A DNA stretch of 64,000 bases from the IMG/VR virus record IMGVR_UViG_3300037245_001419, positions 124,001 through 188,000 of that record; one strand, written 5' to 3'. A program made the position numbers and the translations under genes. The notes under the pieces were generated by a model, which was given only the letters and a program-made list of their open reading frames with translations, did not search any database and was not told the origin of the DNA. Below are positions 19,901 to 60,125 of the stretch, piece after piece. Numbering within the stretch: position 1 is the stretch's first letter; every line of letters begins with the position of its first letter.

Positions 19901-20221
19901 ATGAGTTTTAGACAATTTTTTTATGAAGGCATGGCCGTTCTTAATGATAGACAAAGCAAACTAGAAGCATCACCATACCCACGAGTGGGGAGAACTTCTT
20001 ATAATGCAGTCGATGAGAATACATGGTCTGGTCACGATGCACACGCACATGGATTTAATCTAGATGAGAACGGTAACGGTAAAACAGATAGCTTCGGTAA
20101 CGTAAGCGGAAAAGATACCCACTACCATGAAGTTAGAGGATGGGCAGTATTGCCAGCCAATAACCACGCTCACGGACTTACAGACAAATCTATCAGCGAT
20201 AAGAACTTCAAGAACAGCTAA
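19901..20221 (+). CDS. His-rich YmaF-like protein, putative internal head protein
   Basis: MSFRQFFYE start; repeated HxH motifs (HAH, HYH, HAH); late promoter at 19854. Confidence 0.55.
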   Translation: MSFRQFFYEGMAVLNDRQSKLEASPYPRVGRTSYNAVDENTWSGHDAHAHGFNLDENGNGKTDSFGNVSGKDTHYHEVRGWAVLPANNHAHGLTDKSISDKNFKNS

Positions 20222-20357: not shown

Positions 20358-20783
20358 TTATTTTTTATCTCCTGTCCAAGTATCCCATTCTTTCCAACGT
20401 GTAAAATTAATATGTATTTCTTTTTCAGAGAAATACTTTAGTTTTAGTTGGCATATTTCTTCAAGGCCGTCAATACGAGAGTAATTCAACGCACATCCCT
20501 TGCTACTACAAATATCCTTCAGCTTACTCAATTGATTTTGAGGTATACCAAGTGTATAGTAATAGTCTCCACTATAACGCAACGCCCACGCATGCCTATC
20601 ACCATCTTCACCTGATCTAACTAAAGTAATTTTATCAGTCAACCCATACTTATAATTACCAATCAACAAACTAAAGTTCATACTACTATTACTATAACCA
20701 GACGGTTTACCTTCAAAATGAGTGTTAAATATATTTCCGTATAAGTATTTGAGCACTACTTTTCTTTTATCTAACTTTGCCAT
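20358..20783 (-). CDS. Paralogue family X member
   Basis: MAKLDKRKV start; C-terminal ICSSKGCALNYSRIDGLEEICQLKLKYF. Confidence 0.75.
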   Translation of the reverse strand: MAKLDKRKVVLKYLYGNIFNTHFEGKPSGYSNSSMNFSLLIGNYKYGLTDKITLVRSGEDGDRHAWALRYSGDYYYTLGIPQNQLSKLKDICSSKGCALNYSRIDGLEEICQLKLKYFSEKEIHINFTRWKEWDTWTGDKK

Positions 20784-20786
20784 ACA

Positions 20787-21173
20787 TTACCAGGTTTTAA
20801 ATTCTACTTCTTTATCTGCAAAATACTTTAGTTTGATTGCACAAATCGCTTCGAGACCTTCTTCTCTTGATAGCAGCATAGCCTTGTTCCTATCCTTCAA
20901 TATCTCTTCTGCCATTTTAACCTTATCTAAATGTATCTCAAAAGCAAACCAATAAGGCGTACACCCATACGTAGCACGCACAGGATTATATAACAACCCT
21001 TTACTTACTCTAATTCCACTAAGCTTTACCAGCTCATATTTATCAGTTAAAACATAACTATAATTGCCGATACGTAAACTGTAGTATGTCATCCTAGAGT
21101 ATATGTTACCTCTATACGCATACCCATGTAAACGATGTACCCGTACTTTTCTTTTATCAAGCTTTGCCATCAA
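20787..21173 (-). CDS. Paralogue family X member
   Basis: MAKLDKRKV start; AMLLSREEGLEAICAIKLKYF. Confidence 0.75.
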   Translation of the reverse strand: MMAKLDKRKVRVHRLHGYAYRGNIYSRMTYYSLRIGNYSYVLTDKYELVKLSGIRVSKGLLYNPVRATYGCTPYWFAFEIHLDKVKMAEEILKDRNKAMLLSREEGLEAICAIKLKYFADKEVEFKTW

Positions 21174-21507
21174 ATATTATCTCCGTATTGGGAAAACACT
21201 TTAGTTTGCACTCACAGAAATCCACTATCTTATTATCATTATCTCGTGAATGAAGAACAGCATATCGTGAGTGCTCACAAATCTTTTTAACTATATCTAA
21301 CTTAGCCTCTGAGAATGAAAATGTATGAGACCTTCTTACAGACCATTGATTGTCATGAACAGTCATAGATGGACGACGAGTTACATTTCCTTTATGGTAA
21401 TCATATAATACGTTATCTATTAATAATCTGAAGTAGTGATTGTCATGAAATACATTGATGCCGTTATCGTGTAAAAACTTAAGTTTAACTATCTTTTTCT
21501 TTGTCAT
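21157..21507 (-). CDS. Paralogue family X member
   Basis: ICEHSRYAVLHSRDNDNKIVDFCECKLKCF. Confidence 0.75.
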   Translation of the reverse strand: MTKKKIVKLKFLHDNGINVFHDNHYFRLLIDNVLYDYHKGNVTRRPSMTVHDNQWSVRRSHTFSFSEAKLDIVKKICEHSRYAVLHSRDNDNKIVDFCECKLKCFPNTEIIFDGKA

Positions 21508-21784
21508 ACATTTTTATTCGGTGTGGATAAAGCTTTTTCAAATCATCTAACGTTTCATGCATTTGCTGCAAAAGCTCTCGACCTTTGGTAGGCTTAAAAC
21601 AACCCATTTTAGTTTTTTCTTCGTCTGATTTACGAATGCCATTTTCATCCCACCATATCTCTAACATTCTATCATTACCATCTTTACACACTCTATCATA
21701 TACAAGTTTATGATTTACAAATCTGTCATTGCAACATTCATAAGAATCACATTCGTTACAACCACCAGTAATTTCTTCACTCAT
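21485..21784 (-). CDS. Cys-containing hypothetical protein
   Basis: CNECDSYECC motif; overlaps its neighbours. Confidence 0.6.
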   Translation of the reverse strand: MSEEITGGCNECDSYECCNDRFVNHKLVYDRVCKDGNDRMLEIWWDENGIRKSDEEKTKMGCFKPTKGRELLQQMHETLDDLKKLYPHRIKMYDKEKDS

Positions 21785-22476
21785 TTGTTTTTCCTCCGTT
21801 TTTTGCCGCCAGGTAACGTTTTAAAAGAGTAATCATAGAACCCCTTAGAATCTCGTATGACTTCATCAGATCCAACAGGAACTGTCCCTTGTGACTCCAA
21901 CGCCAACTCATTATTAAGATACATATGCAGCTCTTGCATTGCAGTATATGGATCTAGAACTCTAACGAAATCTAAAGGTTTCAACTCAGGATTAACTTCT
22001 AATCCATATTTGGAATCACGCCAATAATGATCATGAATTACCCTAAAGATAGGCACTTTATATTTTAAAAATAATGATTGAAGAAACTTATTATTGCGCA
22101 TCTTCTCATATGCATTTTTATATGAATAATTATCTCTAATATGATGTCGCCTACCCTCCTTTGAGTATTCAGCAAAGAATATATCCATTTCATCAGAATC
22201 AAATATATACCGATCTTTAGTATGATAATTTGAAGACACTACTTTCACATAAGGATATATCACTCCGGCAAAACCGATAGCTTCAATCTCATGAATAGTA
22301 TTGGATTTATTCCAATCATCCCAATATATACAGTGATCATCCCATGTGAATATTTCCAACTTATGTAGAGCATTTTCAATTATTTCAGTTTTACGTTCAT
22401 ACACTGGCACAACCTCGTCTTGAAACATGTTCAAGACGGAGTCGTAGTAATCAGTAAACTTGGAATAGATCCTCAT
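21781..22476 (-). CDS. Conserved phage hypothetical protein
   Basis: MRIYSKFTDYYD...DPYTAMQEL...KGF..YSFK, a pattern familiar from large myophages. Confidence 0.65.
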   Translation of the reverse strand: MRIYSKFTDYYDSVLNMFQDEVVPVYERKTEIIENALHKLEIFTWDDHCIYWDDWNKSNTIHEIEAIGFAGVIYPYVKVVSSNYHTKDRYIFDSDEMDIFFAEYSKEGRRHHIRDNYSYKNAYEKMRNNKFLQSLFLKYKVPIFRVIHDHYWRDSKYGLEVNPELKPLDFVRVLDPYTAMQELHMYLNNELALESQGTVPVGSDEVIRDSKGFYDYSFKTLPGGKKRRKNK

Positions 22477-22958
22477 TACTTTTCATCCATAAACTTTTTA
22501 CGAACATCCATCAGACATATACCCAATAGATTTTTTCCCTTCCAGTTTTTCCGGTCAAATCTTTTCGGGTCATGCTCATCCAAACCGATACCCCAAATCT
22601 TATCAACAGGGGAAGCTTCAACAAGTTCTTTATCACCAGTATCAAACATATACTTTTTTAGTTGCTCGTTCTGACCGAACTTAGCTATGTTCGCATCGAT
22701 AACAATTTTAATGCGGTGCTTATTCCACTCAGCATCATTAAAGCCTTCAACCATACGACCATGCATTTTTTGATCCCATGGATTTTTAGCTTCGAGTATC
22801 ATAGCGAGTCGTTCGTCATCATTAAAGACCCGTGCCTTACCTGCCATCATGTATTGCTCTGCAGTTAAGTATGTAACTCCATCAACGACAAATTCTGATT
22901 TGAACCACTGGCTAAAAGGGCCACCGTAAAAGAAATGAAAATTGTTAGGCTTAGTCAT
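22476..22958 (-). CDS. NADAR (YbiA-like) family protein
   Basis: FSQWF...TAEQYMMAGKA...KFGQN...LVEASPVDKIWGIG...GKNLLG. Confidence 0.93.
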   Translation of the reverse strand: MTKPNNFHFFYGGPFSQWFKSEFVVDGVTYLTAEQYMMAGKARVFNDDERLAMILEAKNPWDQKMHGRMVEGFNDAEWNKHRIKIVIDANIAKFGQNEQLKKYMFDTGDKELVEASPVDKIWGIGLDEHDPKRFDRKNWKGKNLLGICLMDVRKKFMDEK

Positions 22959-23439
22959 TAGTTTTTCCTCCAAGTAATGTTTCTGCTTCAACCAGTGTGG
23001 CATTCTTGTCCCATATGACAACGGTAACATCTTCTCCTCCTAGTTCTTCATTAATAATTAGTTCTATAATTTCCCAGTCACCTCTTGCAAGACCAGCACC
23101 TATTTTAGGCATGCCAATCTTCTTGCCAGAGAACAACTTTTTAATACATCTCATTGCACCACGAACAGCATCGTAGTCAATGTTTATGTTTTGCCTGTTA
23201 CAACCAAACTGTGTGTAAGAGTTTATAACTGTTGGCTTAGTTTTCATAGTGTATGTAATCGTACCCAACTTACTTCTATCACCCTTAATAGTTGCTTTAT
23301 CCTTTTCCCAGGCTTCAGGGAAACTTTCTTTAATCTGTGGCGCAATACCAGACCCCATGTTACAGAAGCAGTTACAGCCATGTGTAATAGCATCAAACTG
23401 AAGTGCATCTTTTACGAGGTCTCCTTTAATATACTTCAT
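22951..23439 (-). CDS. Macrodomain (ADP-ribosylhydrolase) protein
   Basis: KGDL...HGCNCFCNMGSGIAPQIK...INSYTQ...PKIGAGLARGDW. Confidence 0.92.
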   Translation of the reverse strand: MKYIKGDLVKDALQFDAITHGCNCFCNMGSGIAPQIKESFPEAWEKDKATIKGDRSKLGTITYTMKTKPTVINSYTQFGCNRQNINIDYDAVRGAMRCIKKLFSGKKIGMPKIGAGLARGDWEIIELIINEELGGEDVTVVIWDKNATLVEAETLLGGKTND

Positions 23440-23918
23440 TTACCCTTCTTGTAGTTAAAAAATTTGTCAATGTCTTTTTCTTCACCCTGATCTCTGAACA
23501 TGTTAATAGATGATATAAGGTCTTCGTAACTATCAACTAGGTAGTTATGCTTAATTTTAACATCAAATGGTATAACGTGTTTTGGGAAAAACTTTAGTTT
23601 AATCTTCGAGAATAGGTTCACTTCATCAGATTTATGTCTGTGGATAAGAGCCATGTTAGTGGACGTACATATCTCAGAAACCGCAGTTAAGTCATCAGCA
23701 CTAAACATAAATGTATAATGGAAAGAAGACGACGACCCATACCAACGTTGCTTAGACCTATCCTCATAAGTTTTAGCATCGTACCGCACAAGATTGTCAT
23801 TCAACATCATGTATTTGTAGTTGCCAACCAACAAGTTAAAATGAACCCCATCTTTTGAATCACGAGGATGGCTTAGCAGCCATCTTAAATTAATTTTTCT
23901 ATCATCAAGATTAGCCAT
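23436..23918 (-). CDS. Paralogue family X member
   Basis: MANLDDRKI start; ICTSTNMALIHRH...FSKIKLKFF. Confidence 0.7.
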   Translation of the reverse strand: MANLDDRKINLRWLLSHPRDSKDGVHFNLLVGNYKYMMLNDNLVRYDAKTYEDRSKQRWYGSSSSFHYTFMFSADDLTAVSEICTSTNMALIHRHKSDEVNLFSKIKLKFFPKHVIPFDVKIKHNYLVDSYEDLISSINMFRDQGEEKDIDKFFNYKKGK

Positions 23919-24369
23919 TTTCAGCCTCCTTAGATTTTTTAGTTGCTAGATACTCAAGAGAGTATTTAATGTTATCGGTTACTTCAGTTACATTAGAAAA
24001 CAACATGTCTACCTTGTGGTAGTTATTATCATAAATCTTGTATAGCCGAAGACCGTCATCAAATATAATTAATGAATGCTGAGGGTATTGCTTCAATATT
24101 GTTTCAGTGTACTTCAAATCCATTAACGTCTGGTCTAGGTATGCTGCCTCGTGATTCTCCTCAAGTGTGTAATGCATGGGGGAACTATCACGTACTTTTT
24201 CACGCTTAATGTTTTCACATTTATTTTTAGTAATACGTTGTTGTATGCCAAAGCTGTTACCACGCTTATCAATAAGCACAAAGTTCATCTTAACACGAGT
24301 GTGTATTAAGTTATAACACGCTGAAAGCATCTTAGATGATTCGCTTAGTGTAAAATACCGTTCTGTCAT
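23911..24369 (-). CDS. Hypothetical protein
   Basis: ORF in the operon. Confidence 0.6.
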   Translation of the reverse strand: MTERYFTLSESSKMLSACYNLIHTRVKMNFVLIDKRGNSFGIQQRITKNKCENIKREKVRDSSPMHYTLEENHEAAYLDQTLMDLKYTETILKQYPQHSLIIFDDGLRLYKIYDNNYHKVDMLFSNVTEVTDNIKYSLEYLATKKSKEAENG

Positions 24370-24590
24370 GTTTCACCCTCATAAGAGTTTATTATGTTTA
24401 CCGCCTCTTCCATGCTATACGTTGGACTAGACTCACTGTCTCTATTTTTATCCATCCTAGCTACTTTCCAATAGTCCGCAGTTCTAGAATTCTCAATATC
24501 ATCTTCGGTTATTGTGCGTAATGCATCATTTAACCCAATCTGGCCGATCTTATAACACAAGTCATAGTCGGTTAACTTTTTTACATCCAA
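24366..24590 (-). CDS. Hypothetical protein
   Basis: ORF in the operon. Confidence 0.5.
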   Translation of the reverse strand: MDVKKLTDYDLCYKIGQIGLNDALRTITEDDIENSRTADYWKVARMDKNRDSESSPTYSMEEAVNIINSYEGET

Positions 24591-24618
24591 TCCATTGACC
24601 TCTCCAACCCAGTGATTA

Positions 24619-24855
24619 TTATTCTTCCACGCTCTCTTTTACTACTTTAGTTTGATCTTCCTGACTGTCAATATACAGCTGAAGCATACCACCGACAACG
24701 GCATCAAATGATACACTATAACCATCACATACAGTCATGATATGATCTATAGTTTCGTCGCTTATAGTAACATCTATCTCTGATACTTTAGTCATGGATA
24801 GATGTTTTTCATACAATTTAAAGTATGATTTTTCTGGTACTTTTGGTGTATCCAT
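24619..24855 (-). CDS. Hypothetical protein
   Basis: ORF in the operon. Confidence 0.55.
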   Translation of the reverse strand: MDTPKVPEKSYFKLYEKHLSMTKVSEIDVTISDETIDHIMTVCDGYSVSFDAVVGGMLQLYIDSQEDQTKVVKESVEE

Positions 24856-25262
24856 TAATGCTCCTTCTCAGTGACTTCATCAACGAATTCCCATTTTTTG
24901 TCGGATGTATTGAATCTGTATATCATAACATCTTGATACTCAACTGCAATCTCAAGTATACCACTACGTATCATTTTACCGCTAGTGATTGATTCGAAAT
25001 ACGCAAGTATCTCATCAACATCACTATAGTCTCTGAGATCACCATAGAAGATAACCGCACGACATGCAAGAGCGTTCTCAGTACCTGTCTTGATAAGCTT
25101 GTATTCCAGGCTACCTTCACTACCACACGGCAGTATAGTGTCTTCTACATCATTCTCCCATGTAGATATTTCACCTAGTTCTTTTTCTGTTATGATGGGT
25201 ATACCTAGGGCAGGTATTCCGTCATATCTAATTGATGCATTTACATGAGTCCATTGGGACAT
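24855..25262 (-). CDS. Conserved phage hypothetical protein
   Basis: MSQWTHVNASIR...LPCGSEGSL...GDLRDY. Confidence 0.65.
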   Translation of the reverse strand: MSQWTHVNASIRYDGIPALGIPIITEKELGEISTWENDVEDTILPCGSEGSLEYKLIKTGTENALACRAVIFYGDLRDYSDVDEILAYFESITSGKMIRSGILEIAVEYQDVMIYRFNTSDKKWEFVDEVTEKEH

Positions 25263-25263
25263 A

Positions 25264-25545
25264 TTATTCCTCGTCTTTGTTGAATATTTCTATAACCTGT
25301 TTTACCTTGTCGATCATATGAAGATCATCGCAATAAAATACCCCATCACCAACAAACTCACGCTGTTGAGTAAGATAAAAGTCAGGAACTTTATCCACTT
25401 TAGTTACTTCCTTCAAGACATTAGCTAAAGCAATCATTTTATACTTATCATCCATTTTTGTATCTTCACATACATCAGTACAAGAAGTAAAAGCTAAAGC
25501 ACCGATTATTAACTGTGCTTCTTTTTTAGTAATTTCTATTTTCAT
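25264..25545 (-). CDS. Hypothetical protein
   Basis: First gene of the minus-strand block. Confidence 0.55.
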   Translation of the reverse strand: MKIEITKKEAQLIIGALAFTSCTDVCEDTKMDDKYKMIALANVLKEVTKVDKVPDFYLTQQREFVGDGVFYCDDLHMIDKVKQVIEIFNKDEE

Positions 25546-25617
25546 AAGTTATTTCACAAAAGTGGCGTATATGTAATAAAATAACAAAATAAAAGTTATT
25601 GTCAATGTATTTTTTTA

Positions 25618-25646
25618 TTGAAATTAATAATTATATTTACTATACT
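25618..25646 (+). promoter_or_regulatory. sigma70-type promoter for the + strand block
   Basis: TTGAAA-17 nt-TATACT upstream of GGAG and ATG 25682. Confidence 0.6.
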
Positions 25647-25681
25647 TATTATATAATATATGTACTAAGATTGGAGTTAAT

Positions 25682-25882
25682 ATGATTATTTGTGTTGAGT
25701 GTCACACAGAGATGAAAGTTGAGAAAAATGGTGTTGTTGTCCGCTATGGTGGAAACCACTGTTACTCAGGAGACAGTTGGAAATGCCCTACATGCGGTAA
25801 AATGGTAATCAATTGCAATAACAGCCCGTACCCTTCAGATGAACCTTTAGATCCGAAACACGATATCGAAATGAATCAATGA
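25682..25882 (+). CDS. Zinc-ribbon protein
   Basis: CVEC...CPTC. Confidence 0.7.
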   Translation: MIICVECHTEMKVEKNGVVVRYGGNHCYSGDSWKCPTCGKMVINCNNSPYPSDEPLDPKHDIEMNQ

Positions 25883-26901
25883 TAAAAATAGTAGATGACT
25901 TACTGTACATGATTCGCCAGTTGAAAGCAGTTGAATTGTCAATAGACAAGCTAGACATTATAGAGAAATATCCTCAATGTAGAAATTTATTGGAGATAAC
26001 CTATAATCCTTTTAAGCACTTCGCAGTTGGTACAAAACAGATAGATAAAGAGTTAGAATCTACTTTAGTTGATATTCCGAAAATAGATAAGCCGTACATC
26101 ATGATCCATCACTTCTACAATTTTTTAAACGATTCGTTGCTTAACAAAAGATACAGTCGTTCTGTAGGAATCAAAGCGATAAAGAGATGGTGTACAATAT
26201 TTCCCGAATATGAGACCCTTATTATCAACATTTTCAATAAGAACTTGAAGTGTGGAATAGATGCTCAGCTTATCAATTGTATCTATCCGAAACTTATACC
26301 AATGTTTAACCCTACACGACCCAAAATTTGGGATACGATGTGTCCTAAGAGGGTCTTTTCTGAGTACGTTACAATGGAGAAGGTTGAGGGCGAACTGGTC
26401 TACATGAGCATTAGAAACCGAAAGGTGAACATATATAGCAAGCACACCATACCTATTGTCACATTGAATTACCTTAAGGATGAAGTACAGTCATTTATCG
26501 ACATTACTGATATTGATAATATCATGATTGAAGGTCATGTATTCATAGGCAACCAGAGCTTTGATGAGTCTCACCAGAGCATCGTTAGAGGCAGTAAGAA
26601 GTTAACTAATATAATATTTAAAGTGTATGACATACTAACCCTCGATGAGTTCGAGGTGTATTACGACGAGTCAAAAAAATACACAGATCGACATAAGAGA
26701 TTCGCAGAGATGGGTTTCTCTAATTTAAGTATGATACAAGTCGTACCATACCAGCAGTATGATCCAAACGGTGAACACATACTATCACACATGAAAACAA
26801 CAATTTCCGATAACAATTGGAAAGGAGCAATTCTTCGTAAGAACATACCTTACGACATTAAAATTTCGTATAACATAATTAAAGTATACCCCAATTCGTA
26901 A
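25879..26901 (+). CDS. Degenerate ATP-dependent DNA ligase (T4 gp30-like), no OB domain
   Basis: N-terminal DBD-like region (YNP, NLKCGI..LIN.IYP.LIP); motif I EKVEG; IIIa VYDIL; motif IV KGAIL (E to K); stop after motif V. Confidence 0.7.
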   Translation: MIKIVDDLLYMIRQLKAVELSIDKLDIIEKYPQCRNLLEITYNPFKHFAVGTKQIDKELESTLVDIPKIDKPYIMIHHFYNFLNDSLLNKRYSRSVGIKAIKRWCTIFPEYETLIINIFNKNLKCGIDAQLINCIYPKLIPMFNPTRPKIWDTMCPKRVFSEYVTMEKVEGELVYMSIRNRKVNIYSKHTIPIVTLNYLKDEVQSFIDITDIDNIMIEGHVFIGNQSFDESHQSIVRGSKKLTNIIFKVYDILTLDEFEVYYDESKKYTDRHKRFAEMGFSNLSMIQVVPYQQYDPNGEHILSHMKTTISDNNWKGAILRKNIPYDIKISYNIIKVYPNS

Positions 26902-26917
26902 TTTTACGGAGGTAAAT

Positions 26918-27406
26918 ATGAAAACAATAATTAGTACAGGACTTCGAGGCGCAAGCCAAGGAGCTGTAGGAGCAGCATTTATTAATGAGATAGCTGTAGA
27001 TGGATATTGTCCAAAAGGATTTATCTTGCCAACAGGCAAGCAACCAGAACTCGCATCAATGGGACTCAAAGAGCATGAGTCAGACTCGGTTGTAGAGTGT
27101 TTTGAAGATAACATGAACGCATCAGACGGCACAATATTTTTCTTTATGGAGAGCCTGGTAGACCAACTCGATAAAGAGTTAATGGACATCGTTGAAGCGT
27201 CAAACACACCATCACTACTGATAGACCTTGATAGCCCTTTGGACGTAAGAATCGTTGAGAAATTTATCCAGAAAAATGACATAGAGACCTTGCACGTAGA
27301 CGGCTGTCAAGACTCGCCCCACGATAAAACCATATATAAGTTTGTGTGTGGATATGTAACTAAAGTAGTTAAGAACCTAAAACATGAGGCTTTATTCGAG
27401 CACTAG
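26918..27406 (+). CDS. SLOG / molybdenum-carrier-like protein, divergent
   Basis: IIS.G..GA...A...GYCPKG...N...SDGT...LHVDG. Confidence 0.7.
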   Translation: MKTIISTGLRGASQGAVGAAFINEIAVDGYCPKGFILPTGKQPELASMGLKEHESDSVVECFEDNMNASDGTIFFFMESLVDQLDKELMDIVEASNTPSLLIDLDSPLDVRIVEKFIQKNDIETLHVDGCQDSPHDKTIYKFVCGYVTKVVKNLKHEALFEH

Positions 27407-27413
27407 GAGCAAC

Positions 27414-27902
27414 ATGAGCAAACCCTCACTACTAAGAAAAGAGATGGAAGACAGACGTATAGAGATGAAAGGAAAATTAAATGCAGTTGAAGTAGAATTA
27501 GTACAGATACCAAATACCCACTTTAAGTCTGAAGAATGTCAACGTCTAAACTCCACAAAGAGATTATTAATTAAAGAACTAAACAAATTAACTATAGGGA
27601 TTAAGAATATCATGGAACTCGAATCAGACCCTAATGTAGTAAAACAAATGGATGACATCTATAAAAAACTTGAATCTGGCGAGATGTCACCATCTGACTT
27701 GCAGAACATGGTAGTCAAGATGGAGGGCGGTGTTGAAAATGACGATGATACCCCAGACTGGCTAACTGAAGTAGACGATGATGAGAATGAAGATTCAGAC
27801 ACTATTGAACCAAAAAAAGAGGAAGAGGACGAAAAAGGAGTAAATACCGCTTCAGACGATGATATATCTCAATCTGTAGACGATCTACTCGACAATTTAT
27901 AA
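27414..27902 (+). CDS. Coiled-coil protein with acidic tail
   Basis: AGGAG then MSKPS; D/E-rich C-terminus. Confidence 0.6.
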   Translation: MSKPSLLRKEMEDRRIEMKGKLNAVEVELVQIPNTHFKSEECQRLNSTKRLLIKELNKLTIGIKNIMELESDPNVVKQMDDIYKKLESGEMSPSDLQNMVVKMEGGVENDDDTPDWLTEVDDDENEDSDTIEPKKEEEDEKGVNTASDDDISQSVDDLLDNL

Positions 27903-27937
27903 ATAATTTCATAAACACCATATATCTAGGAGACAAG

Positions 27938-28339
27938 ATGAAAATAATCTGGAAAGATATAAAAGGGTTTGAAGGAATTTATAAAATATCAAATACTGGC
28001 AGAGTAGTTCACAGTAAAACTCAAGCAGAACTCACAGGGCCGGACGTTACCTTAACTAAGAACAATACACGTTCAAAAGTTAAGATAACAAATATTATGA
28101 AGACTCACTACCCAGAGTTATTCGTAGTAAAAGAAATAGTTACAGATACTTTAGTTGAGACTTTAGTTGATGTGTTAGTGAAGGACATAACAGGCGAACA
28201 AAAACTTCTTGTCTTGTCCATCGAAGGAATTGAGTACACTTCTTATAGAGAAGCATCCGACAAATTGAACTTGAAAACGTCTACCATAAAGAGACGGGTC
28301 AACTCAAAAAAGTTCGAGGCTTACTTAAGCTTAGAGTAA
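27938..28339 (+). CDS. NUMOD4 DNA-binding protein lacking the HNH nuclease
   Basis: WKDIKGFEGIYKISNTGRV; C-terminal YTSYREASDKLNL HTH-like motif; no HNH motif. Confidence 0.75.
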   Translation: MKIIWKDIKGFEGIYKISNTGRVVHSKTQAELTGPDVTLTKNNTRSKVKITNIMKTHYPELFVVKEIVTDTLVETLVDVLVKDITGEQKLLVLSIEGIEYTSYREASDKLNLKTSTIKRRVNSKKFEAYLSLE

Positions 28340-28356
28340 CAATTTTTTCGGGAGAC

Positions 28357-28653
28357 ATGGTCATGATTATGAAAATTAATCATTATGACTTTCTAACAAC
28401 ATATCAACTAGATGATAGGTCTAGCTGGTATTTGTCTCTAAAACCAGAAAAGATGCAAAGAATAAATACGATTGTATACAGCGTATGTACATCTAATAGT
28501 TTAGCTCTTCTGTATTCGAAGTTCGAATCTAAAGAGTTTAAATATTTGAGTAACGATATAAACGAGTTGTGTAAAATAAAGCTAAAACACAGTGAACCTA
28601 TATTCATTGAAAGGAAATATAATTATGAGCAAAAAAAAAACATTCGGGATTGA
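28357..28653 (+). CDS. Paralogue family X member
   Basis: VCTSNSLALLYSK...INELCKIKLKH. Confidence 0.65.
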   Translation: MVMIMKINHYDFLTTYQLDDRSSWYLSLKPEKMQRINTIVYSVCTSNSLALLYSKFESKEFKYLSNDINELCKIKLKHSEPIFIERKYNYEQKKNIRD

Positions 28654-29122
28654 CGATTACATTAATAAAGACCTGAAGCAGCTAGGTAAAGAAGAGGATA
28701 CAACTTCTAAAAAAGCACCCAAGCTTACTATGTTACGCTATATGGTAACGCCTAGACAATTCAATCAAAACTTTGGTGAAAACAAACCAAATCTAGTTCA
28801 GCCTGTAGAAGAATTCAACATGAATAACGATGTGTACAACATGGTTTATGTTCTATTCAATCATGACAAAGAGATTTGGAGAATGTTTACCACCATGGAA
28901 TCACAAGAGACTGTAGAGCTTATCAGAGATAATAAAGCTGGCCGTGTCGAGTTGATATGCCGTGAGAACTATCACGCTATCGTTAGACTTAAAGATGACA
29001 ACAAAAAAATTCAAGAGCTTGCTGACTTCAAAAGAAAGTATAAGCAAAATATCGATGTGTATCATCTTGAATTAGACTTCGCACAAGGTGTAAAGAAGTT
29101 CGTCGGTCAAGAAATAGCATAA
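28625..29122 (+). CDS. Hypothetical protein
   Basis: ORF MSKKKTF... Confidence 0.6.
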   Translation: MSKKKTFGIDDYINKDLKQLGKEEDTTSKKAPKLTMLRYMVTPRQFNQNFGENKPNLVQPVEEFNMNNDVYNMVYVLFNHDKEIWRMFTTMESQETVELIRDNKAGRVELICRENYHAIVRLKDDNKKIQELADFKRKYKQNIDVYHLELDFAQGVKKFVGQEIA

Positions 29123-29442
29123 TGAAAACGGTCGTAAAATACGGATTCGACGACCATGGGAATAAGATAGAACCAGAAAATGTCGATGGAACCTTAAATG
29201 GTTCCGTTGGTATTTTATACTATGATATTAATGAAGGTCTTGATAGATTCACATTTTACCACCACGATGAAATAGAATTAGCACAAGATATAATGGAATC
29301 TGGCAACTTGATTTCGTCTATATTAAACATCCGCAATAATAATAAATACATTTGTAGGTTGTGTGAATGGAGACTAAAGAATCGTAAGATTAAATTAGTA
29401 TATGGTGATGAGAAATCCTATAACCCAAGTCTGTCTTGTTAA
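29122..29442 (+). CDS. Probable paralogue family X member
   Basis: SSILNIRNNNKYICRLCEWRLKN. Confidence 0.55.
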   Translation: MKTVVKYGFDDHGNKIEPENVDGTLNGSVGILYYDINEGLDRFTFYHHDEIELAQDIMESGNLISSILNIRNNNKYICRLCEWRLKNRKIKLVYGDEKSYNPSLSC

Positions 29443-29782
29443 GATACAAAAAATTTATACTGAAACACGATCAGTAGAGTATTTTCTTAAGGGTAAAATT
29501 ACAGACGTATACAACTCAAAAAATTTCGATAACAGATTAAAAGCCTCATTTATAACTAACGATACTGGTTATAAATGGGGCTTCTTTCGTCACACCTACA
29601 GCGAAGAATTCTTTGAGCTTGTCACAGATATATGCTCCAACAATGCAATCGCAATAATCAACATGCAACATGAAGAAAAGTTTATAAGGAAGCTGGCTTG
29701 GTACAAACTGAAGTACAGGTCGTGTATTCCTATTAAGGAAAAGATAGTATTACAAACTCAAAAAAACAGACTCATGAATTAA
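29402..29782 (+). CDS. Paralogue family X member
   Basis: DICSNNAIAIINMQHEEKFIRKLAWYKLKY. Confidence 0.65.
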   Translation: MVMRNPITQVCLVKIQKIYTETRSVEYFLKGKITDVYNSKNFDNRLKASFITNDTGYKWGFFRHTYSEEFFELVTDICSNNAIAIINMQHEEKFIRKLAWYKLKYRSCIPIKEKIVLQTQKNRLMN

Positions 29783-29784
29783 GA

Positions 29785-30018
29785 ATGTTCGTTACTATTC
29801 TTGTCAATTCAGTTTTGTTTAAACTGGTTAAATACGATGGGGATAAATTTGCAAATAAACTTCAGTTTCAAGTAATCAAATCAGACATACCTAAGATAAT
29901 TTCGATATGTAAAAACAATGCTGCAGCCTTGATACATTCAAGAGATGATAGTGAACAGATAAGAAAATTTTGTGTGATTAAGCTTAAGCATAAAGAGATG
30001 ATTAAGATATTTTATTAA
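29785..30018 (+). CDS. Paralogue family X member (minimal)
   Basis: SICKNNAAALIHSRDDSEQIRKFCVIKLKH. Confidence 0.7.
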   Translation: MFVTILVNSVLFKLVKYDGDKFANKLQFQVIKSDIPKIISICKNNAAALIHSRDDSEQIRKFCVIKLKHKEMIKIFY

Positions 30019-30050
30019 GGGAGAGGATGCGAGTGACACCCTCTCCCTTA
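30016..30050. terminator. GC-rich hairpin between convergent blocks
   Basis: TAAGGGAGAGG...CCTCTCCCTTA. Confidence 0.7.
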
Positions 30051-30070
30051 CACTGACCGAGGGTAAGAGG

Positions 30071-30418
30071 TCAGTGTTGAGGCTCTTCTTTACAATGTTT
30101 AACACGCCCACGCAAGTCTGTCATGACGATAAAATTTTCTCTTCCATAAGACTTGTATAGGTAATAATTAACTTTATTTTTACAAACTATAATGGTATTT
30201 TGTTGTTTCTCAACATGAACATGCATTAACCCATGATGAGTATGTTCACCATTTACATTATCGACTGTCCTATTTTTGACACTTAAAGGAGATTCTACTG
30301 AATATAAAATAAGACCCCACAAAATTAAACCTATAAATGCAAAAATAATAGAATATTTTTTAAGTTTGTCACTCTCTTCTTTATTAACATCAAACATATA
30401 TTTTAAATACCCTATCAT
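30071..30418 (-). CDS. Membrane-anchored hypothetical protein
   Basis: TM segment YSIIFAFIGLILWGLILY. Confidence 0.6.
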   Translation of the reverse strand: MIGYLKYMFDVNKEESDKLKKYSIIFAFIGLILWGLILYSVESPLSVKNRTVDNVNGEHTHHGLMHVHVEKQQNTIIVCKNKVNYYLYKSYGRENFIVMTDLRGRVKHCKEEPQH

Positions 30419-30430
30419 CAGTCACACCAA

Positions 30431-30652
30431 TTACTTGCCACGTCTTTTACGTCTTTCTCTTTTCTCTCGATTCTTTCTTTTGCCAGTAAATATCTTACCT
30501 AGCTCTGATCGGTTGTCATGCTTGCTGACTTGCATTAACTCTTCCTGTTTTGCTGTCATCTGCTCTCTATGCACTCGTTCATAACGCTCAGGGTCTAACC
30601 CTTTCATTTCTTCTTTGCTGAATTGCTCAATCATTCCTGTTCTTGTATCCAT
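30431..30652 (-). CDS. Basic hypothetical protein
   Basis: Arg/Lys-rich C-terminus; AGGAG SD. Confidence 0.6.
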   Translation of the reverse strand: MDTRTGMIEQFSKEEMKGLDPERYERVHREQMTAKQEELMQVSKHDNRSELGKIFTGKRKNREKRERRKRRGK

Positions 30653-30663
30653 ACTTTACTCCT

Positions 30664-31032
30664 TTAACACCAACACGATTCTAAACTTATTTTACTTAAT
30701 GTTTCTTTATCTGTAACTACTTCTACTTCGATATTAAGTAACTTTCGTATATCGAACCCTTCTTTTCTTCTAAATGCCCTTGCCCAATAACCAACTTCGG
30801 AAGCTCGTATGAGAAGCTTGTTGTTATCAGCTATTTCTATTTCATTAACAGAAAAATAATGCACTTCTTTTTCATAGCACATTTTTAATTTGTCATTTTG
30901 CTTTAAAGTATCTTCTGAATGAAATTCTATTACACATCCATCTAAACCAATCATTCGTCCAGACCGTCTGTCACGCTCAGCAACTTTTATAGAAGCATTA
31001 ATTATTTTCATGACTCCTCTTCCCCTATCCAC
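30664..31032 (-). CDS. Hypothetical protein
   Basis: ORF in the operon. Confidence 0.55.
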   Translation of the reverse strand: MDRGRGVMKIINASIKVAERDRRSGRMIGLDGCVIEFHSEDTLKQNDKLKMCYEKEVHYFSVNEIEIADNNKLLIRASEVGYWARAFRRKEGFDIRKLLNIEVEVVTDKETLSKISLESCWC

Positions 31033-31553
31033 TTCCTGTCTTGCAACAATTTAATAATCTCTTCTGCACTAGGTGACTTAGGCATCGGCTTCCACAAAAT
31101 GATCGGGTCGCATCGCTCTATACGATTTTCAGTGAGTTTTCCATCTTTTTCGAAACCATACGCACTAGTCATTTTAAACCCGTCTTTTTTACGAAAAAAC
31201 TCTTGATGTACGCTGGGCCTGTTTAACATAGTACCAGTCCAACAAGGATCATAATCAATAGCCAAAACATATGTACCAAATCTACCTTCTTGAATTTCTG
31301 GTAGTTGATCATCAACGAATATCCACTCGTCTTTTACCTTGTCCGCTATTGCTTCAGCTATGATTTCATCAGACCGTTTCTTTCTAGCTTCCCATGCTGA
31401 ACCACCACAATCCTTACAAACCATTTTGTCGTGAAATTTAATTGGAATTATGAAAGCACTGGAAGAAATACAATGTGGATTGCCGCACTTGTAATAAACT
31501 TCTTCGGCTGCCAGTTCTTCTTTTACGATGGCTAGTATTTCTTCTTTATTCAT
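31008..31553 (-). CDS. Zinc-finger + DUF551-like protein
   Basis: Start MNKEE; CGNPHC...CKDC; WIFVDDQLPE...WKPMPKSP. Confidence 0.65.
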   Translation of the reverse strand: MNKEEILAIVKEELAAEEVYYKCGNPHCISSSAFIIPIKFHDKMVCKDCGGSAWEARKKRSDEIIAEAIADKVKDEWIFVDDQLPEIQEGRFGTYVLAIDYDPCWTGTMLNRPSVHQEFFRKKDGFKMTSAYGFEKDGKLTENRIERCDPIILWKPMPKSPSAEEIIKLLQDRKWIGEEES

Positions 31554-31839
31554 AAGCAATAGGATATTGAGATTTAGGCTTGCACTGTATGATCTTGCTG
31601 TCTGTACCAAACTTTGCAGATAAAGAAAATATGTGGACACCAGCACTATAAACATATGTAACACCGTCTATACAAGCTGTTTTGCTATAGTGCTCTATTT
31701 GATTAATAAGTCTTTCCTCAGCTCTTTCACGTTCTTTTTTTGAATCGAAACCTTCGCACGCAACAGCGCAGAATAATGCAACTATCAATATCACGATTAA
31801 TGATAGTTGCAGATTAGGATGATCATTAATACACATCAA
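31546..31839 (-). CDS. Membrane-anchored hypothetical protein
   Basis: N-terminal TM; C-terminus (CIDGVTYVY...KIIQC) resembles that of 30071-30418. Confidence 0.55.
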   Translation of the reverse strand: MMCINDHPNLQLSLIVILIVALFCAVACEGFDSKKERERAEERLINQIEHYSKTACIDGVTYVYSAGVHIFSLSAKFGTDSKIIQCKPKSQYPIAYE

Positions 31840-32105
31840 TTAAACTCATCAGGAACAGTAACTAACAGAGCATTCCCTATTATACAATCCATGTTAAAAT
31901 ATTTCCTAACATATTCAGTAGCCCTCAGATTGATTTGTTGGTCTTGTTTTAATCTACTCTCTTCATCAACCAGAAGAACTGTGTCTTCGTCAATAGTGAT
32001 CGCTTCCACCATCTCACAACCTATCAAATCGTAGTATGATTTCAGATGATCTTCACCAATTTCAACTGAAGTAACTTCACCATTTGTATTGTACAAAGTC
32101 GCCAT
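31836..32105 (-). CDS. DUF3846-like protein
   Basis: YYDLIGCEMVE...LVDEE...N.RAT...IIGNALLV. Confidence 0.7.
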   Translation of the reverse strand: MATLYNTNGEVTSVEIGEDHLKSYYDLIGCEMVEAITIDEDTVLLVDEESRLKQDQQINLRATEYVRKYFNMDCIIGNALLVTVPDEFN

Positions 32106-32202
32106 GTTATTTCCTTTTTATTTGCGTTCCCACATTAAATATAACTAAAAAATATTAATTGTGTTATACTTTTTTAATAACAGATAAAAACGGAGTAAGA
32201 TT

Positions 32203-32547
32203 TTGATAACTAAAGTACATAAAACCGTATTAAGAGTGGCAGATATAACTGACACGGACGTTGATGAGCGCTTATATAATTATGTCAGATATAAATCTGA
32301 CGATATGGAGTTCACTACACATGCAGTATTTGACGGTATTGTAGAGGAAATATTAACTAACAAGAGCTTTGCAATCTTGTATTCAAGGGATAGAGACAAA
32401 AACATTCGTGACTTGGTGAATTACTCAATGAGAAACAAATGCGAGTTTGAATTGGTAAAGGAAGAAGCCGTGTCTTGCCATGTAGACATGTATGACTGGG
32501 AATCTTTATATGTGTCAACATTTTCAGAGACTGCTTTAGCTGTCTAA
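32203..32547 (+). CDS. Paralogue family X member
   Basis: EEILTNKSFAILYSRDRDKNIRDLVNYSMRN; GGAG SD. Confidence 0.6.
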   Translation: MITKVHKTVLRVADITDTDVDERLYNYVRYKSDDMEFTTHAVFDGIVEEILTNKSFAILYSRDRDKNIRDLVNYSMRNKCEFELVKEEAVSCHVDMYDWESLYVSTFSETALAV

Positions 32548-36684: not shown

Positions 36685-37764
36685 CTACTTTACTAAATAT
36701 TGTTTCTGGTTAATCTCTTCTAGCATGCCCTTACCCTTTGTGTATGGCTCGATCCACTTCATACGTCGATCAGTCATTTTAATACCACAAGCTTGACTAC
36801 GCCAATGACCTCTTACAAGCCATTTGGGACACGACACAACGTTCTTTAAGTTTGTCAGGCAACTATACTCATCATCAGTCAAACGTCTGTTAGAACCTAT
36901 TACAATGCGACCTATCTTAGACAAATCTTTGTTCTTTTCAGCTACTTTAGTTGCTTCTTTTAACCGATTAGCTTTAGTCTTTTTCTTCTTAGTAACATAT
37001 CGCTTAGCAGGGGTATGATTAAACGATTCCATTGAGCAGATATATAACAGAGAATTGATAATGAAACTATAATGCCTTCTGTATATTGTTTCGTCATCAT
37101 TAAAGTCAATGTCGGTCATTTTTTTATCTTTAGATGTTTTACGGGCTAATAATACATCGTCAAGACTTAGTTGGATCATATCTTCAACTGAAGTACAGTT
37201 AAGTCTTAATGACATTCCAGACTGTTCCAACATACGTTGATCGCCCTTTCGCCCTTCTCCGAACGATTGGGCAAGGATAGAGTTTTCAGCTTCATTGTAT
37301 GTCAATACAATGTCTTTAAAAACCATAACTAAATCACCACTAGCTTGAACCTCTAGTGAAGGGATAGACAACACCATGTTATCAAAAGGCATTTTAATTA
37401 ATTCTGGATTGATATTTTTTATCTCTGTATTAACAAGCTTAAAGAATAAGTCTTCAGTTATATTAAACACTTTTGCTTTACGCATACCCAGATATATTGA
37501 TGCAAAAGTAGATTCAAACAATGGATTGTTATGAAAAAACATATCCCCATATACTTTGATCATTGCAAAACTACAAAACAGCAAACGACTAATGTCAGTA
37601 GGGTATGATTCATTGACAAATTTGTTGCCAAACGCATCGGCCCTTTCATCTGATATTGCAGGAAGAGCTTCATCCATTTGAGCTATAATATCTATACCTT
37701 TATCCTTAAAGTATTCGCATATCTCTTCAATGTGTAAAGGTTCAAATTTCTTAGCTTCCATCAA
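36685..37764 (-). CDS. Conserved phage protein with C-terminal VRGHWR motif
   Basis: KWLVRGHWRSQACG...KWIEPYTKG. Confidence 0.7.
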   Translation of the reverse strand: MMEAKKFEPLHIEEICEYFKDKGIDIIAQMDEALPAISDERADAFGNKFVNESYPTDISRLLFCSFAMIKVYGDMFFHNNPLFESTFASIYLGMRKAKVFNITEDLFFKLVNTEIKNINPELIKMPFDNMVLSIPSLEVQASGDLVMVFKDIVLTYNEAENSILAQSFGEGRKGDQRMLEQSGMSLRLNCTSVEDMIQLSLDDVLLARKTSKDKKMTDIDFNDDETIYRRHYSFIINSLLYICSMESFNHTPAKRYVTKKKKTKANRLKEATKVAEKNKDLSKIGRIVIGSNRRLTDDEYSCLTNLKNVVSCPKWLVRGHWRSQACGIKMTDRRMKWIEPYTKGKGMLEEINQKQYLVK

Positions 37765-41999: not shown

Positions 42000-42386
42000 C
42001 TATTTAGCCTTCCTTAATTCGTCACACTTTTCCCAACAAACACTTTCAGTCACATCTTTAATAACTTCAAATGCTTCATTCAATTTATCTAATGCGTCAT
42101 AGTATTTTTCATTAAACTTATCCATAGGGGCGTTTACTTTAGTTGATAGAATCGCTTCTGCTCTTCTGTCAGCAGTGGTATCCATTTGATTCCATAATTC
42201 GTCGAAAAAGAATTTAGGATTAACATCAATACCATCAATCTGCATGGTAATATCATATGACTTGTTGGATTTATTTTTGTCTAACCATTCACCGTTAAGT
42301 TCTTTAAGCATACCAACAGCTTGTAAAAAGAAGTGACCCATAAGCTCTTTATTGTTGTGCAATAGTTCTTCTCTATCAAATTTCAT
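42000..42386 (-). CDS. Hypothetical protein
   Basis: TAATG-coupled to the cca gene. Confidence 0.6.
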   Translation of the reverse strand: MKFDREELLHNNKELMGHFFLQAVGMLKELNGEWLDKNKSNKSYDITMQIDGIDVNPKFFFDELWNQMDTTADRRAEAILSTKVNAPMDKFNEKYYDALDKLNEAFEVIKDVTESVCWEKCDELRKAK

Positions 42387-59840: not shown

Positions 59841-59918
59841 GTTTGGCACTCCTACCGTTTATCTATTAATAAATATAGCTTATTAATTAATACCTGTCAA
59901 CAACTAAATCACTTTAGT

Positions 59919-60125
59919 TTATAATATTTCTTGTCTTATTATTTGATGCAATGTATTGTAGTCTCCTTTTCTATACCTTGCATCCGTATACAAAACCCCT
60001 TTGACTTTTCTTTTTGCCTCATGGTCATTATCAGCCATAAATGGTATTATGGTGTTTTTACTGACATTACCACCCATTACAACATCAAATTCTACAATAT
60101 TGTATGTTAATTCATAGTGATTCAT
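59919..60125 (-). CDS. Early cassette ORF
   Basis: AGGAGCGCCAAAC-ATG. Confidence 0.6.
   Translation of the reverse strand: MNHYELTYNIVEFDVVMGGNVSKNTIIPFMADNDHEAKRKVKGVLYTDARYRKGDYNTLHQIIRQEIL

What the first reader, a model, noticed from the sequence alone, without database searches (positions are those of the whole stretch)
20358..32547. Unnamed paralogue family (at least 9 genes) with a shared C-terminal IC...AL.(Y/H)SR...I..(L/F)C..KLK module and hypervariable N-termini
Seen in 20358, 20787, 21157, 23436 (minus) and 28357, 29122, 29402, 29785, 32203 (plus), e.g. ICKNNAAALIHSRDDSEQIRKFCVIKLKH versus ICEHSRYAVLHSRDNDNKIVDFCECKLKC. Three also start MA(K/N)LD(K/D)RK. The N-terminal parts are aromatic beta-rich and diverge widely. 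62078 may be a remote member. Inference: a constant docking domain that binds one partner (host or phage protein) with variable target-recognition heads, i.e. an adaptor or anti-defence gene family expanded by duplication.
Basis: partly seen in the sequence, partly recalled or inferred. Interest (0 to 1): 0.68.

Follow-up and report, generated by a model that had tools for sequence, protein, structure and literature searches.

The report
New small-protein family in T4-like phage
An uncultivated T4-like phage carries 15 copies of a previously undescribed small-protein family that shares a conserved three-helix end behind very different front halves. The family is real, old and conserved in related phages, but what it does is still unknown.

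Summary
All nine listed genes pass a leave-one-out profile test. So do a tenth in the window (28625-29122 +) and five elsewhere in the 211.8-kb genome (E 1.7e-14 to 3.5e-4; members score at least 31 bits, the best non-member 8.5; no hits in shuffled ORFs). The "62078" ORF is not a member.

The genome is an uncultivated T4-like phage. An exhaustive profile search found about 60 further cluster representatives. Every context examined was a metagenomic T4-like phage contig, and most carried several copies.

Pfam, PHROGs, PDB sequences, Foldseek, VIA-align and the ESM Atlas give no credible match. AlphaFold models (pTM 0.72-0.74) show one compact beta-beta-beta/alpha-alpha-alpha/beta domain. The conserved positions are mostly core hydrophobics plus three basic residues.

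The front halves share no detectable sequence similarity between subfamilies, but they are not hypervariable:
- Each paralogue has a well-supported orthologue in a related phage.
- Non-synonymous divergence matches that of the neighbouring enzyme genes.
- A 99.8 %-identical strain shows no clustering of changes in the heads.

The genes lie in tightly packed operons that lack T4 late-promoter motifs, next to NADAR and Macro genes.

Best reading: non-enzymatic, early-expressed binding proteins for host takeover or counter-defence. The adaptor idea is untested and only partly supported.

The parts
20358..20783 (-). Family member, 141 aa, MAKLDKRK-type; last gene of the leftward operon
   Evidence: ORF; leave-one-out E 4.1e-11; 74.7 bits with the 78-sequence profile
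20787..21170 (-). Family member, 127 aa from the ATG (MAKLDKRK). The ORF list extends it to a TTG at 21173.
   Evidence: leave-one-out E 6.4e-8. Its 5' end is 25/27 nt identical to that of the 20358 gene (repeat D5).
21157..21507 (-). Family member, 116 aa; the protein used for the first structure model
   Evidence: Leave-one-out E 2.9e-13. AlphaFold pLDDT 79, pTM 0.74; the module has pLDDT 93-96.
23436..23918 (-). Family member, 160 aa, MANLDDRK start, with an extra 44-aa C-terminal tail. It lies immediately upstream of the Macro gene (4-nt overlap).
   Evidence: Leave-one-out E 1.7e-14; orthologue L004:4523-5023 is 64 % identical
28357..28653 (+). Family member, 98 aa, with a 7-residue insertion in the loop between helices 2 and 3
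   Evidence: Leave-one-out E 4.3e-6; orthologue L004:8967-9254 is 76 % identical
28625..29122 (+).
   Evidence: Leave-one-out E 4.2e-7; the database form P0013 starts at MSKKK; orthologue L004:9199-9726 is 71 % identical
29122..29442 (+). Family member, 106 aa, acidic (pI 5.5); the most divergent of the plus-strand cluster
   Evidence: Leave-one-out E 1.7e-5; paired with L004:9726-10019 with support 97/93
29402..29782 (+). Family member, 126 aa; overlaps the preceding member by 41 nt
   Evidence: Leave-one-out E 1e-10; orthologue P0003 = L004:10001-10375 is 62 % identical
29785..30018 (+). Minimal family member, 77 aa; defines the core domain (three strands, three helices, one strand)
   Evidence: Leave-one-out E 8e-14; AlphaFold with 93 sequences gives pLDDT 84.8, pTM 0.72
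32203..32547 (+). Family member, 114 aa, acidic (pI 4.8), with a degenerate KLK motif. It is a solitary gene behind a TGnTATACT extended -10-like site.
   Evidence: Leave-one-out E 6.7e-9; orthologue L004:11783-12091 has support 100/97; upstream sequence
25546..25681 (.). AT-rich divergent intergenic region with sigma-70-like hexamers on both strands. It is the likely start of the leftward (25545 to 20358) and rightward (25682 to 30018) operons that hold nine of the ten members.
   Evidence: The hexamer scan as a whole is not above shuffled expectation, so this is inference.
30019..30070 (.). GC-rich hairpin (GGGAGAGG...CCTCTCCC) between convergent genes; the likely end of the rightward operon
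   Evidence: Sequence read directly

Best explanation
These genes form a previously undescribed family of small (77-176 aa), cytoplasmic, non-enzymatic proteins. The family appears restricted to a clade of uncultivated T4-like phages.

**Anatomy.** Each member is built on one compact domain of about 75 aa. A paralogue-specific N-terminal beta-sheet packs against a conserved C-terminal unit of three helices and a final strand. It also carries three conserved basic residues.

**Evolution.** The copies arose by old duplications, and related phages keep each one separately. That implies distinct, non-redundant jobs.

**Expression (inferred).** They are transcribed in tightly packed operons without late promoters, in the accessory (hyperplastic) part of the genome, beside counter-defence-type enzymes.

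**Most likely mechanism.** Early in infection each paralogue binds a different host or phage macromolecule through its own sheet surface on a common scaffold, serving host takeover or counter-defence.

**Shown versus inferred.** Shown: family membership, distribution, purifying selection and gene arrangement. Predicted: the fold. Inferred: early expression, the binding role and the biological purpose.
For: **Family is real**
- Leave-one-out E 1.7e-14 to 3.5e-4, a clean score gap and no hits in shuffled ORFs.

**Distribution**
- 80 hits at E <= 1e-3 among 1.84 billion proteins, about 60 of them not from this phage. All but two are small (55-237 aa).
- Sources for the ten clusters looked up are JGI, ENA and Logan only.
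- Contexts examined are T4-like. L008 has UvsW, UvsX, gp32, gp41, gp46 and gp47; L009 has RegA. Copy numbers are 11 in L004, 6 in L006, 6 in L010, 3 in L008 and 3 in L009.
- The window's own genome is T4-like, 50-81 % identical to L008 replication proteins.

**No known family or fold**
- Pfam and PHROGs give nothing, and neither do PDB sequences.
- Foldseek E >= 0.18, VIA-align best Z 3.1 and 4.6, Atlas TM < 0.5.

**One domain**
- pTM 0.74 and 0.72 for two different members.
- Conserved positions are hydrophobic core, plus K/R53 (88 % basic), K66 (74 %) and K68 (72 %).
- No conserved catalytic-type residues. The two 'conserved' Cys positions are freely replaced by L, I, A or S.

**Old, separately kept paralogues under purifying selection**
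- Nine starred orthologue pairs.
- pN 0.13-0.43 against 0.20-0.28 for NADAR, Macro, ligase and cpYpsA.

**Expression class**
- TATAAATA occurs seven times on the + strand at 3-20 kb but only once (before the NUMOD4 gene) in 20.3-33 kb.
- Genes overlap or abut, and the two operons diverge from an AT-rich region.

**Neighbourhood**
- NADAR and Macro. NADAR is a demonstrated counter-defence enzyme in T4-like phages (PMC11825919).
- The order Macro, then a protein of about 240 aa, then a MAK-type member is kept in L011/L012.
Against: - No experiment or expression data.
- The promoter scan is not above shuffled expectation (54 sites against 60.7 +/- 7.1). 'Early' therefore rests mainly on the absence of late motifs and on gene packing.
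- The N-terminal sheet is modelled with only moderate confidence (pLDDT 41-85 in model 1, 66-79 in model 2). The single-domain reading could be an AlphaFold packing artefact.
- The zinc-ribbon members lack the final strand. They show that the helical unit can sit behind a quite different front part, which favours a portable module.
- Proximity to counter-defence genes is guilt by association.
Confidence: 0.5

Rival explanations
1. The C-terminal three-helix unit is an autonomous docking module that binds one common hub, host or phage. The unrelated front parts recruit different targets to that hub. This would be analogous to families that combine a constant C-terminal docking box with variable recognition domains.
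For: - The module is the only part shared by all members, and N-part profiles do not cross subfamilies.
- It occurs behind zinc-ribbon-like heads that lack the final strand.
- It occurs in front of L7/L12-C-terminal-like tails or long proline-rich tails.
- Three basic residues are conserved in an otherwise core-type conservation pattern.
Against: - Both models give one compact domain with high pTM.
- Most conservation is buried-type hydrophobic.
- No partner is known and none could be tested.
Confidence: 0.2
2. The members are small nucleic-acid-binding or ribosome/translation-associated regulators. Examples would be modulators of early-to-middle gene expression, mRNA or translation factors.
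For: - 10 of the 15 members are basic (pI 8.8-9.7), and the mean pI of the module is 8.7.
- K/R residues are conserved.
- Three members have zinc-ribbon-like heads.
- Four remote members carry a tail resembling the factor-binding helix-turn-helix of the L7/L12 C-terminal domain, at 19-24 bits.
- An L12-like protein lies next to an HD_4 gene in L006.
Against: - Four members are clearly acidic (pI 4.5-6.2).
- Helix 3 is largely buried, so it is not a typical recognition helix.
- The L12-like tails stay below Pfam's cut-off of 25.9 bits, and none of the 15 members of this genome has one.
- No nucleic-acid-binding family was matched.
Confidence: 0.13
3. The shared module is a self-association surface, so that paralogues form homo- or hetero-oligomers. 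Translational coupling of adjacent genes would then supply matched amounts.
For: Adjacent members overlap by 14-41 nt, which is compatible with coupled translation.
Against: There is no positive evidence. The one homodimer job gave no verdict, which counts neither way. The monomer models are self-contained.
Confidence: 0.05
4. The module is a single, degenerate DUF4116-type alpha-solenoid repeat unit, so the family would be an offshoot of that known repeat family.
For: - The family profile hit a DUF4116 repeat protein, P0036, in five stretches.
- hhalign of the module against P0036 repeat units gives 82 % probability over 25 columns.
- DUF4116 has been modelled as an alpha-solenoid (PMC8078820).
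Against: - No member hits PF13475 in Pfam scans, even at E <= 1.
- The PF13475 model finds no member in the phage genome at E <= 10.
- The unit is never repeated in this family.
- The P0036 score is a sum over repeats.
Confidence: 0.04

Closest known systems
Variable accessory genes of the hyperplastic regions of T4-like phages (Comeau, Arbiol and Krisch 2014, PMC4122927)
   Same: The same genomic setting. Runs of small, phylogenetically variable genes of unknown function sit between blocks of conserved T4 core genes. Copy number changes between related phages (3 against 5 tandem MAK-type genes).
   Different: - Here the small genes belong to one recognisable family of 15 copies.
- They are packed without the promoter/stem-loop (PeSL) elements described in that paper. 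No repeated intergenic motif was found.
- Most copies are stably inherited one-to-one rather than swapped.
DUF4116 (Pfam PF13475) helical repeat
   Same: A similar residue pattern over about 25 positions: hydrophobic, x, x, N, x, x, A-L, then a polar loop, then an I-x-x-L helix. hhalign probability is 82 %.
   Different: - The Pfam model does not detect any member.
- There is a single unit instead of tandem repeats.
- The unit is joined to a beta-sheet and a terminal strand.
- The function of DUF4116 is itself unknown.
Ribosomal protein L7/L12 C-terminal domain (Pfam PF00542)
   Same: Four remote family members (P0034, P0050, P0055, P0066) end in a segment of about 30 aa that matches positions 5-43 of the 67-position model.
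   Different: - This concerns an extra tail, not the family module.
- Scores of 19-24 bits are below the 25.9-bit cut-off.
- No member of this genome has such a tail.
T4 internal proteins, which share a short conserved targeting sequence on otherwise unrelated bodies (from my own knowledge, not tested here)
   Same: A short conserved segment joined to unrelated remainders, in a polymorphic locus of T4-type phages. The MAKLDKRK start is also conserved at the DNA level (25/27 nt).
   Different: - The segment shared by the whole family is C-terminal and part of a folded domain.
- No protease-site-like motif was seen.
- The genes lack late promoters.
- No homology was found.
Small phage anti-defence proteins, such as anti-CRISPR-type binders
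   Same: Small size, no catalytic motifs, location among counter-defence-type genes (NADAR and Macro), and an orthologue of a protein that carries a Pfam AcrVA2-like hit in L004.
   Different: - No sequence or structural match to any such protein. AcrIF5 and AcrIF24 appear only at Z 2.1-2.5, which is noise.
- Evolution is slow and orthologous rather than patchy.

Membership tests
DUF4116 (PF13475) | Match to the Pfam model above its gathering score (24.9 bits) | tested here: not met
   No member is listed at E <= 1 or E <= 0.01 (78 members). The model run against the whole phage genome at E <= 10 hits only one unrelated place, at 11.6 bits.
DUF4116 (PF13475) | Tandem repetition of the 22-residue helical unit | tested here: not met
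   Each member has a single unit. The true DUF4116 protein P0036 has nine.
DUF4116 (PF13475) | Profile-profile similarity of the unit | tested here: inconclusive
   hhalign gives 82 % probability over 25 columns with 12 % identity, against a template built from one protein's repeats.
Ribosomal L7/L12 C-terminal domain (PF00542) | Match above the 25.9-bit gathering score | tested here: not met
   Only the tails of four remote members match, at 19.1-24.2 bits. None of the ten window members matches.
Any PHROG family of phage proteins | Significant match to a PHROG profile | tested here: not met
   The best E-values are 0.021-0.98, each to a different family of unknown function.
Any solved fold (PDB) or predicted viral fold (BFVD) | Structural match clearly above background | tested here: not met
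   Foldseek best E is 1.1 and 0.42 (pdb) and 0.18 (BFVD). VIA-align best Z is 3.1 and 4.6, below the tool's stated typical background of 7-8. Atlas TM < 0.5.
T4-like phage accessory (hyperplastic-region) early genes | Location between conserved T4 core blocks in a T4-like genome, with small tightly packed ORFs and no late promoter | tested here: met
   T4 core homologues are present in the genome. TATAAATA is absent from the clusters. For gene packing.
T4-like phage accessory (hyperplastic-region) early genes | Transcription early in infection | not testable with these tools
The promoter scan is not above shuffled expectation.
Two-part adaptors with a constant docking domain | The constant part is an autonomous domain that binds one common partner | not testable with these tools
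   The models show one compact domain.

The most novel reading that the evidence does not exclude
The three-helix unit is a portable docking module. It plugs many unrelated heads (beta-sheet heads, zinc ribbons) and tails (L7/L12-like factor-binding segments) into a single host hub. A T4-like phage would then carry a combinatorial set of 15 adaptors that redirect one host machine to many targets. This is a logic known from eukaryotic viruses but not described for phages.
Probability: 0.15. Interest if true: 0.78.

Novelty: new variant of a known kind. Interest (0 to 1): 0.5.

Why it matters
T4-like phages are among the best-studied and most abundant viruses, yet most of their small accessory genes have no known function.

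This work defines a family with a clear signature, 15 copies in one genome and about 60 further cluster representatives in metagenomic T4-like contigs. No sequence family or fold match was found, and confident structure models are available. That gives a concrete, tractable entry point:
- one 77-aa minimal member to solve;
- three conserved basic residues to mutate;
- a natural set of orthologous paralogues to screen for partners.

If the members prove to be binders of host machinery or of defence proteins, the family would add a new scaffold to the phage counter-defence repertoire. If they share one partner, it would be a new kind of phage adaptor system.

Tried and rejected
**Searches that found nothing**
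- Megablast of 13 kb, and tblastn of four proteins, against 50,697 GenBank phage records gave no match. No deposited phage could therefore be used.
With an orthologue pair it found only the same phage again, as L005.
- ESM Atlas feature searches gave no usable hit. The Atlas's own model of the 77-aa protein is poor, with pLDDT 0.43.
- The profile search against PDB sequences gave only chance-level rows, best E 0.04 to a designed scaffold.

**Tests without a result**
- Complex prediction on two copies of the 77-aa member gave no verdict (score 0.08, mark 0.42). It counts neither for nor against self-association.
I did not try to reach reads by any other route, and read laying was not used.
- The sigma-70 promoter scan found no more sites than in shuffles, so it is used only descriptively.

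**Ideas rejected**
- A chance motif or non-coding ORFs. Rejected by the leave-one-out test, shuffles, orthologue conservation and pN well below pS.
- Recent duplication. DNA repeats are limited to two short conserved motifs.
- A zinc-binding role for the two module cysteines. Both positions are freely replaced by hydrophobic or small residues.
- Another genetic code was never needed.

Full report
**1. What is there**

The window is bases 124001-188000 of a single 211,777-bp record. It is an IMG/VR virus genome that CheckV estimates to be 93 % complete, with about 34 % GC.

A tenth ORF in the window, 28592/28625-29122 +, shows it too.

An iterative profile search over all 1,260 ORFs of at least 35 aa in the genome converged on 15 members. 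Ten are in the window. Five lie at genome coordinates 52613-52918, 59590-60015, 72396-72728, 72730-73155 and 73278-73751, all on the minus strand. There were no hits in residue-shuffled ORFs.

In a leave-one-out test every member was found by a profile that had never seen it, at E 1.7e-14 to 3.5e-4. With a broader profile the members score 31-78 bits and the best non-member 8.5 bits.

**2. What kind of genome**

- Hallmark proteins taken from a related contig (L008: neck protein, UvsW, gp46, gp47, DNA polymerase, UvsX, gp41) hit the genome at 62.5-84.7 kb with 50-81 % identity. This is an uncultivated T4-like phage.
- It has 23 tRNAs and a tmRNA.
- No deposited phage matches by megablast or tblastn.

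**3. Relatives**

- The word-indexed search found one foreign homologue, P0003.
- P0003 lies on L004, a 56.6-kb JGI contig that is syntenic with the window: NADAR, Macro, ligase, cpYpsA, NUMOD4 and the CCA-adding enzyme. L004 has 11 family members in 20 kb.
- The exhaustive profile search of 1.84 billion representatives gave 80 hits at E <= 1e-3, 21 of them at <= 1e-10. About 60 are not from this phage. Apart from two long proteins discussed in section 4 (P0036, P0076), they are small (55-237 aa).
- The ten clusters looked up come only from metagenome sources.
- In these hits the same module, roughly I..IC...N..ALLn.(K/R)h....IR.LC..KLKy.....I.I, follows 7-118 N-terminal residues and precedes 0-147 tail residues.
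- The longer contigs examined are T4-like. L008 has UvsW, UvsX, gp32, gp41, gp46 and gp47, and L009 has RegA. They are again multi-copy: L006 has 6, L010 has 6, L008 has 3 and L009 has 3.

**4. Known families and folds**

- Pfam and PHROGs give nothing significant for the members.
- A profile search of PDB sequences gives nothing.
- Two AlphaFold models are confident. The 116-aa member with 26 sequences has pLDDT 79 and pTM 0.74, with the module at pLDDT 93-96. The 77-aa member with 93 sequences has pLDDT 84.8 and pTM 0.72.
- Both show an N-terminal antiparallel sheet, three helices and a final strand in one compact domain.
- Foldseek (PDB, BFVD), VIA-align over 48,161 representative chains and the ESM Atlas give no match above background. 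The best Z values are 3.1 and 4.6, the best Foldseek E is 0.18, and TM stays below 0.5.

Two leads were followed.

(a) *DUF4116.* The family profile touched P0036, a confirmed DUF4116 repeat protein. hhalign of the module against its repeat units gives 82 % probability over 25 columns. However, the Pfam model detects no member, either in direct scans or when run over the genome, and the unit is never repeated. Membership is therefore not supported. The other long hit, P0076 (848 aa, six stretches), shows no significant Pfam match.

(b) *L7/L12-like tails.* Four remote members have an extra C-terminal tail that resembles the helix-turn-helix of the ribosomal L7/L12 C-terminal domain. The scores are 19-24 bits against a cut-off of 25.9. 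None of this genome's members has such a tail.

**5. Constant module, variable heads?**

- *Conservation pattern.* Mapped on the 77-aa member, 16 of the 19 well-conserved positions are hydrophobic core positions, including the two 'Cys' columns, which are freely replaced by L, I, A or S. The conserved polar positions are three basic residues: position 53 (88 % basic), 66 (74 %) and 68 (72 %).
- *Heads between subfamilies.* With the module removed, profiles of the N-terminal parts of one subfamily do not find those of the others (best E 7.5).
- *Zinc-ribbon heads.* Three members, lying between the gp47 and gp46 homologues in this phage and in L008, have CxxC...CxxC zinc-ribbon-like heads and lack the final strand.
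- *Not hypervariable.* Clear orthologues (window against L004) are 58-69 % identical in the head and 72-82 % in the module.
- *Old paralogues.* A maximum-likelihood tree gives nine strongly supported window-L004/L008 orthologue pairs. Only the tandem MAKLDKRK-type array differs in number, 3 against 5.
- *Selection.* Synonymous sites are saturated. pN is 0.13-0.43, the same range as the neighbouring NADAR, Macro, ligase and cpYpsA genes.
- *Strain comparison.* A 99.8 %-identical strain (L005) differs at 40 positions in 18.5 kb. Seven of these are in family genes, and five of the seven are in the extra tail of 23436-23918.
- *No recent duplication.* DNA-level repeats are confined to the MAKLDKRK start (25/27 nt between two neighbours) and the KLKYF stretch.

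**6. Arrangement and expression class**

- Nine of the ten window members lie in two operon-like runs that diverge from the AT-rich region 25546-25681. One runs leftward to 20358; the other runs rightward to 30018 and ends at a GC-rich hairpin (30019-30070).
- Within the runs, genes overlap or abut.
- The T4 late-promoter motif TATAAATA occurs seven times on the + strand at 3-20 kb. In 20.3-33 kb it occurs only once, just before the NUMOD4 gene.
- The generic sigma-70 scan is not above shuffled expectation.
- Early or middle expression is therefore an inference.
- Neighbours include NADAR and Macro. NADAR is an orphan-antitoxin counter-defence enzyme in T4-like phages (PMC11825919).
- The order Macro, then a protein of about 240 aa, then a MAK-type member recurs in L011/L012.
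- The setting matches the hyperplastic regions of T4-like genomes (PMC4122927).

**7. Interpretation**

The evidence supports a new family of small non-enzymatic proteins on a domain with no fold match in the libraries searched, kept as many old, individually conserved paralogues in a clade of T4-like phages.

My best reading (0.5) is that these are early accessory binding proteins. The helical unit is the common scaffold and each head provides its own binding surface.

The rivals are:
- a nucleic-acid or translation-associated role (0.13);
- self-association (0.05);
- a DUF4116 offshoot (0.04).

The homodimer job gave no verdict and counts neither way.

**8. Verdict**

- It is a new protein family of a known kind of phage feature. 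Interest is moderate (0.5), and would be higher if a common partner or a defence target were found.

Noticed in passing
window 22476-23030 (-) and 22951-23439 (-): Adjacent NADAR (Pfam E 3.7e-51) and Macro (E 4.6e-6) genes sit in the middle of the leftward family operon. NADAR is a published counter-defence enzyme against DarTG1 in T4-like phages (PMC11825919). The pair is kept in L004, and a Macro gene is kept in L011.
   Followed up: partly
window 36685-37764 (-): A 359-aa protein that is 47 % identical to the L004 protein carrying a precomputed Pfam AcrVA2-like hit. The window protein itself gave no such hit at E <= 0.01.
   Followed up: partly
window 21781-22476 (-): A 231-aa protein of unknown function (phrog_4243, E 4.2e-10). 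In the window, L004 and L011/L012 a protein of this size (222-241 aa) lies between the Macro/NADAR genes and MAK-type family members. I did not compare these proteins directly. This may be a conserved gene neighbourhood.
   Followed up: no
window 20757-20783 and 21144-21170: The first 27 nt of two neighbouring family genes (coding MAKLDKRKV) are 25/27 identical, although the proteins are only about 35 % identical overall. The cause could be gene conversion, a recombination point or a constraint on the translation start.
   Followed up: no
window 20002-20119 and 23341-23469: Differences from the 99.8 %-identical strain L005 are clustered in two short tracts, mostly synonymous. This suggests small recombination patches rather than evenly spread mutation.
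   Followed up: no
window 3192, 6137, 6385, 17228, 17801, 18368, 19854, 27898 (+): T4-type late-promoter motif TATAAATA. It is frequent before the + strand genes at 3-20 kb. The only copy in the family region lies 40 nt before the NUMOD4 (homing-endonuclease-like) gene at 27938-28339.
   Followed up: partly
genome 22846-47040 (outside the window): 23 tRNA genes and a tmRNA (tag ANNTFAVAA), all on the minus strand. The window holds a CCA-adding enzyme at 42386-43753 (-) but no tRNA gene.
   Followed up: no
L006:4616-5059 (+): A 147-aa phage protein passes Pfam's cut-off for the ribosomal L7/L12 C-terminal domain (31.6 bits). It lies next to an HD_4 (RelA/SpoT-type hydrolase) gene and is surrounded by family members.
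   Followed up: partly
window 26918-27406 (+) and 25879-26901 (+): A circularly permuted YpsA (SLOG) protein (E 1.2e-15) lies directly after an ATP-dependent DNA ligase. cpYpsA also lies near family members in L004 and L009.
   Followed up: no
window 21485-21784 (-) and 25682-25882 (+): Two further small cysteine-rich ORFs inside the operons: 99 aa with CNECDSYECC, and 66 aa with two CxxC pairs. Neither matches a family in PHROGs.
   Followed up: no
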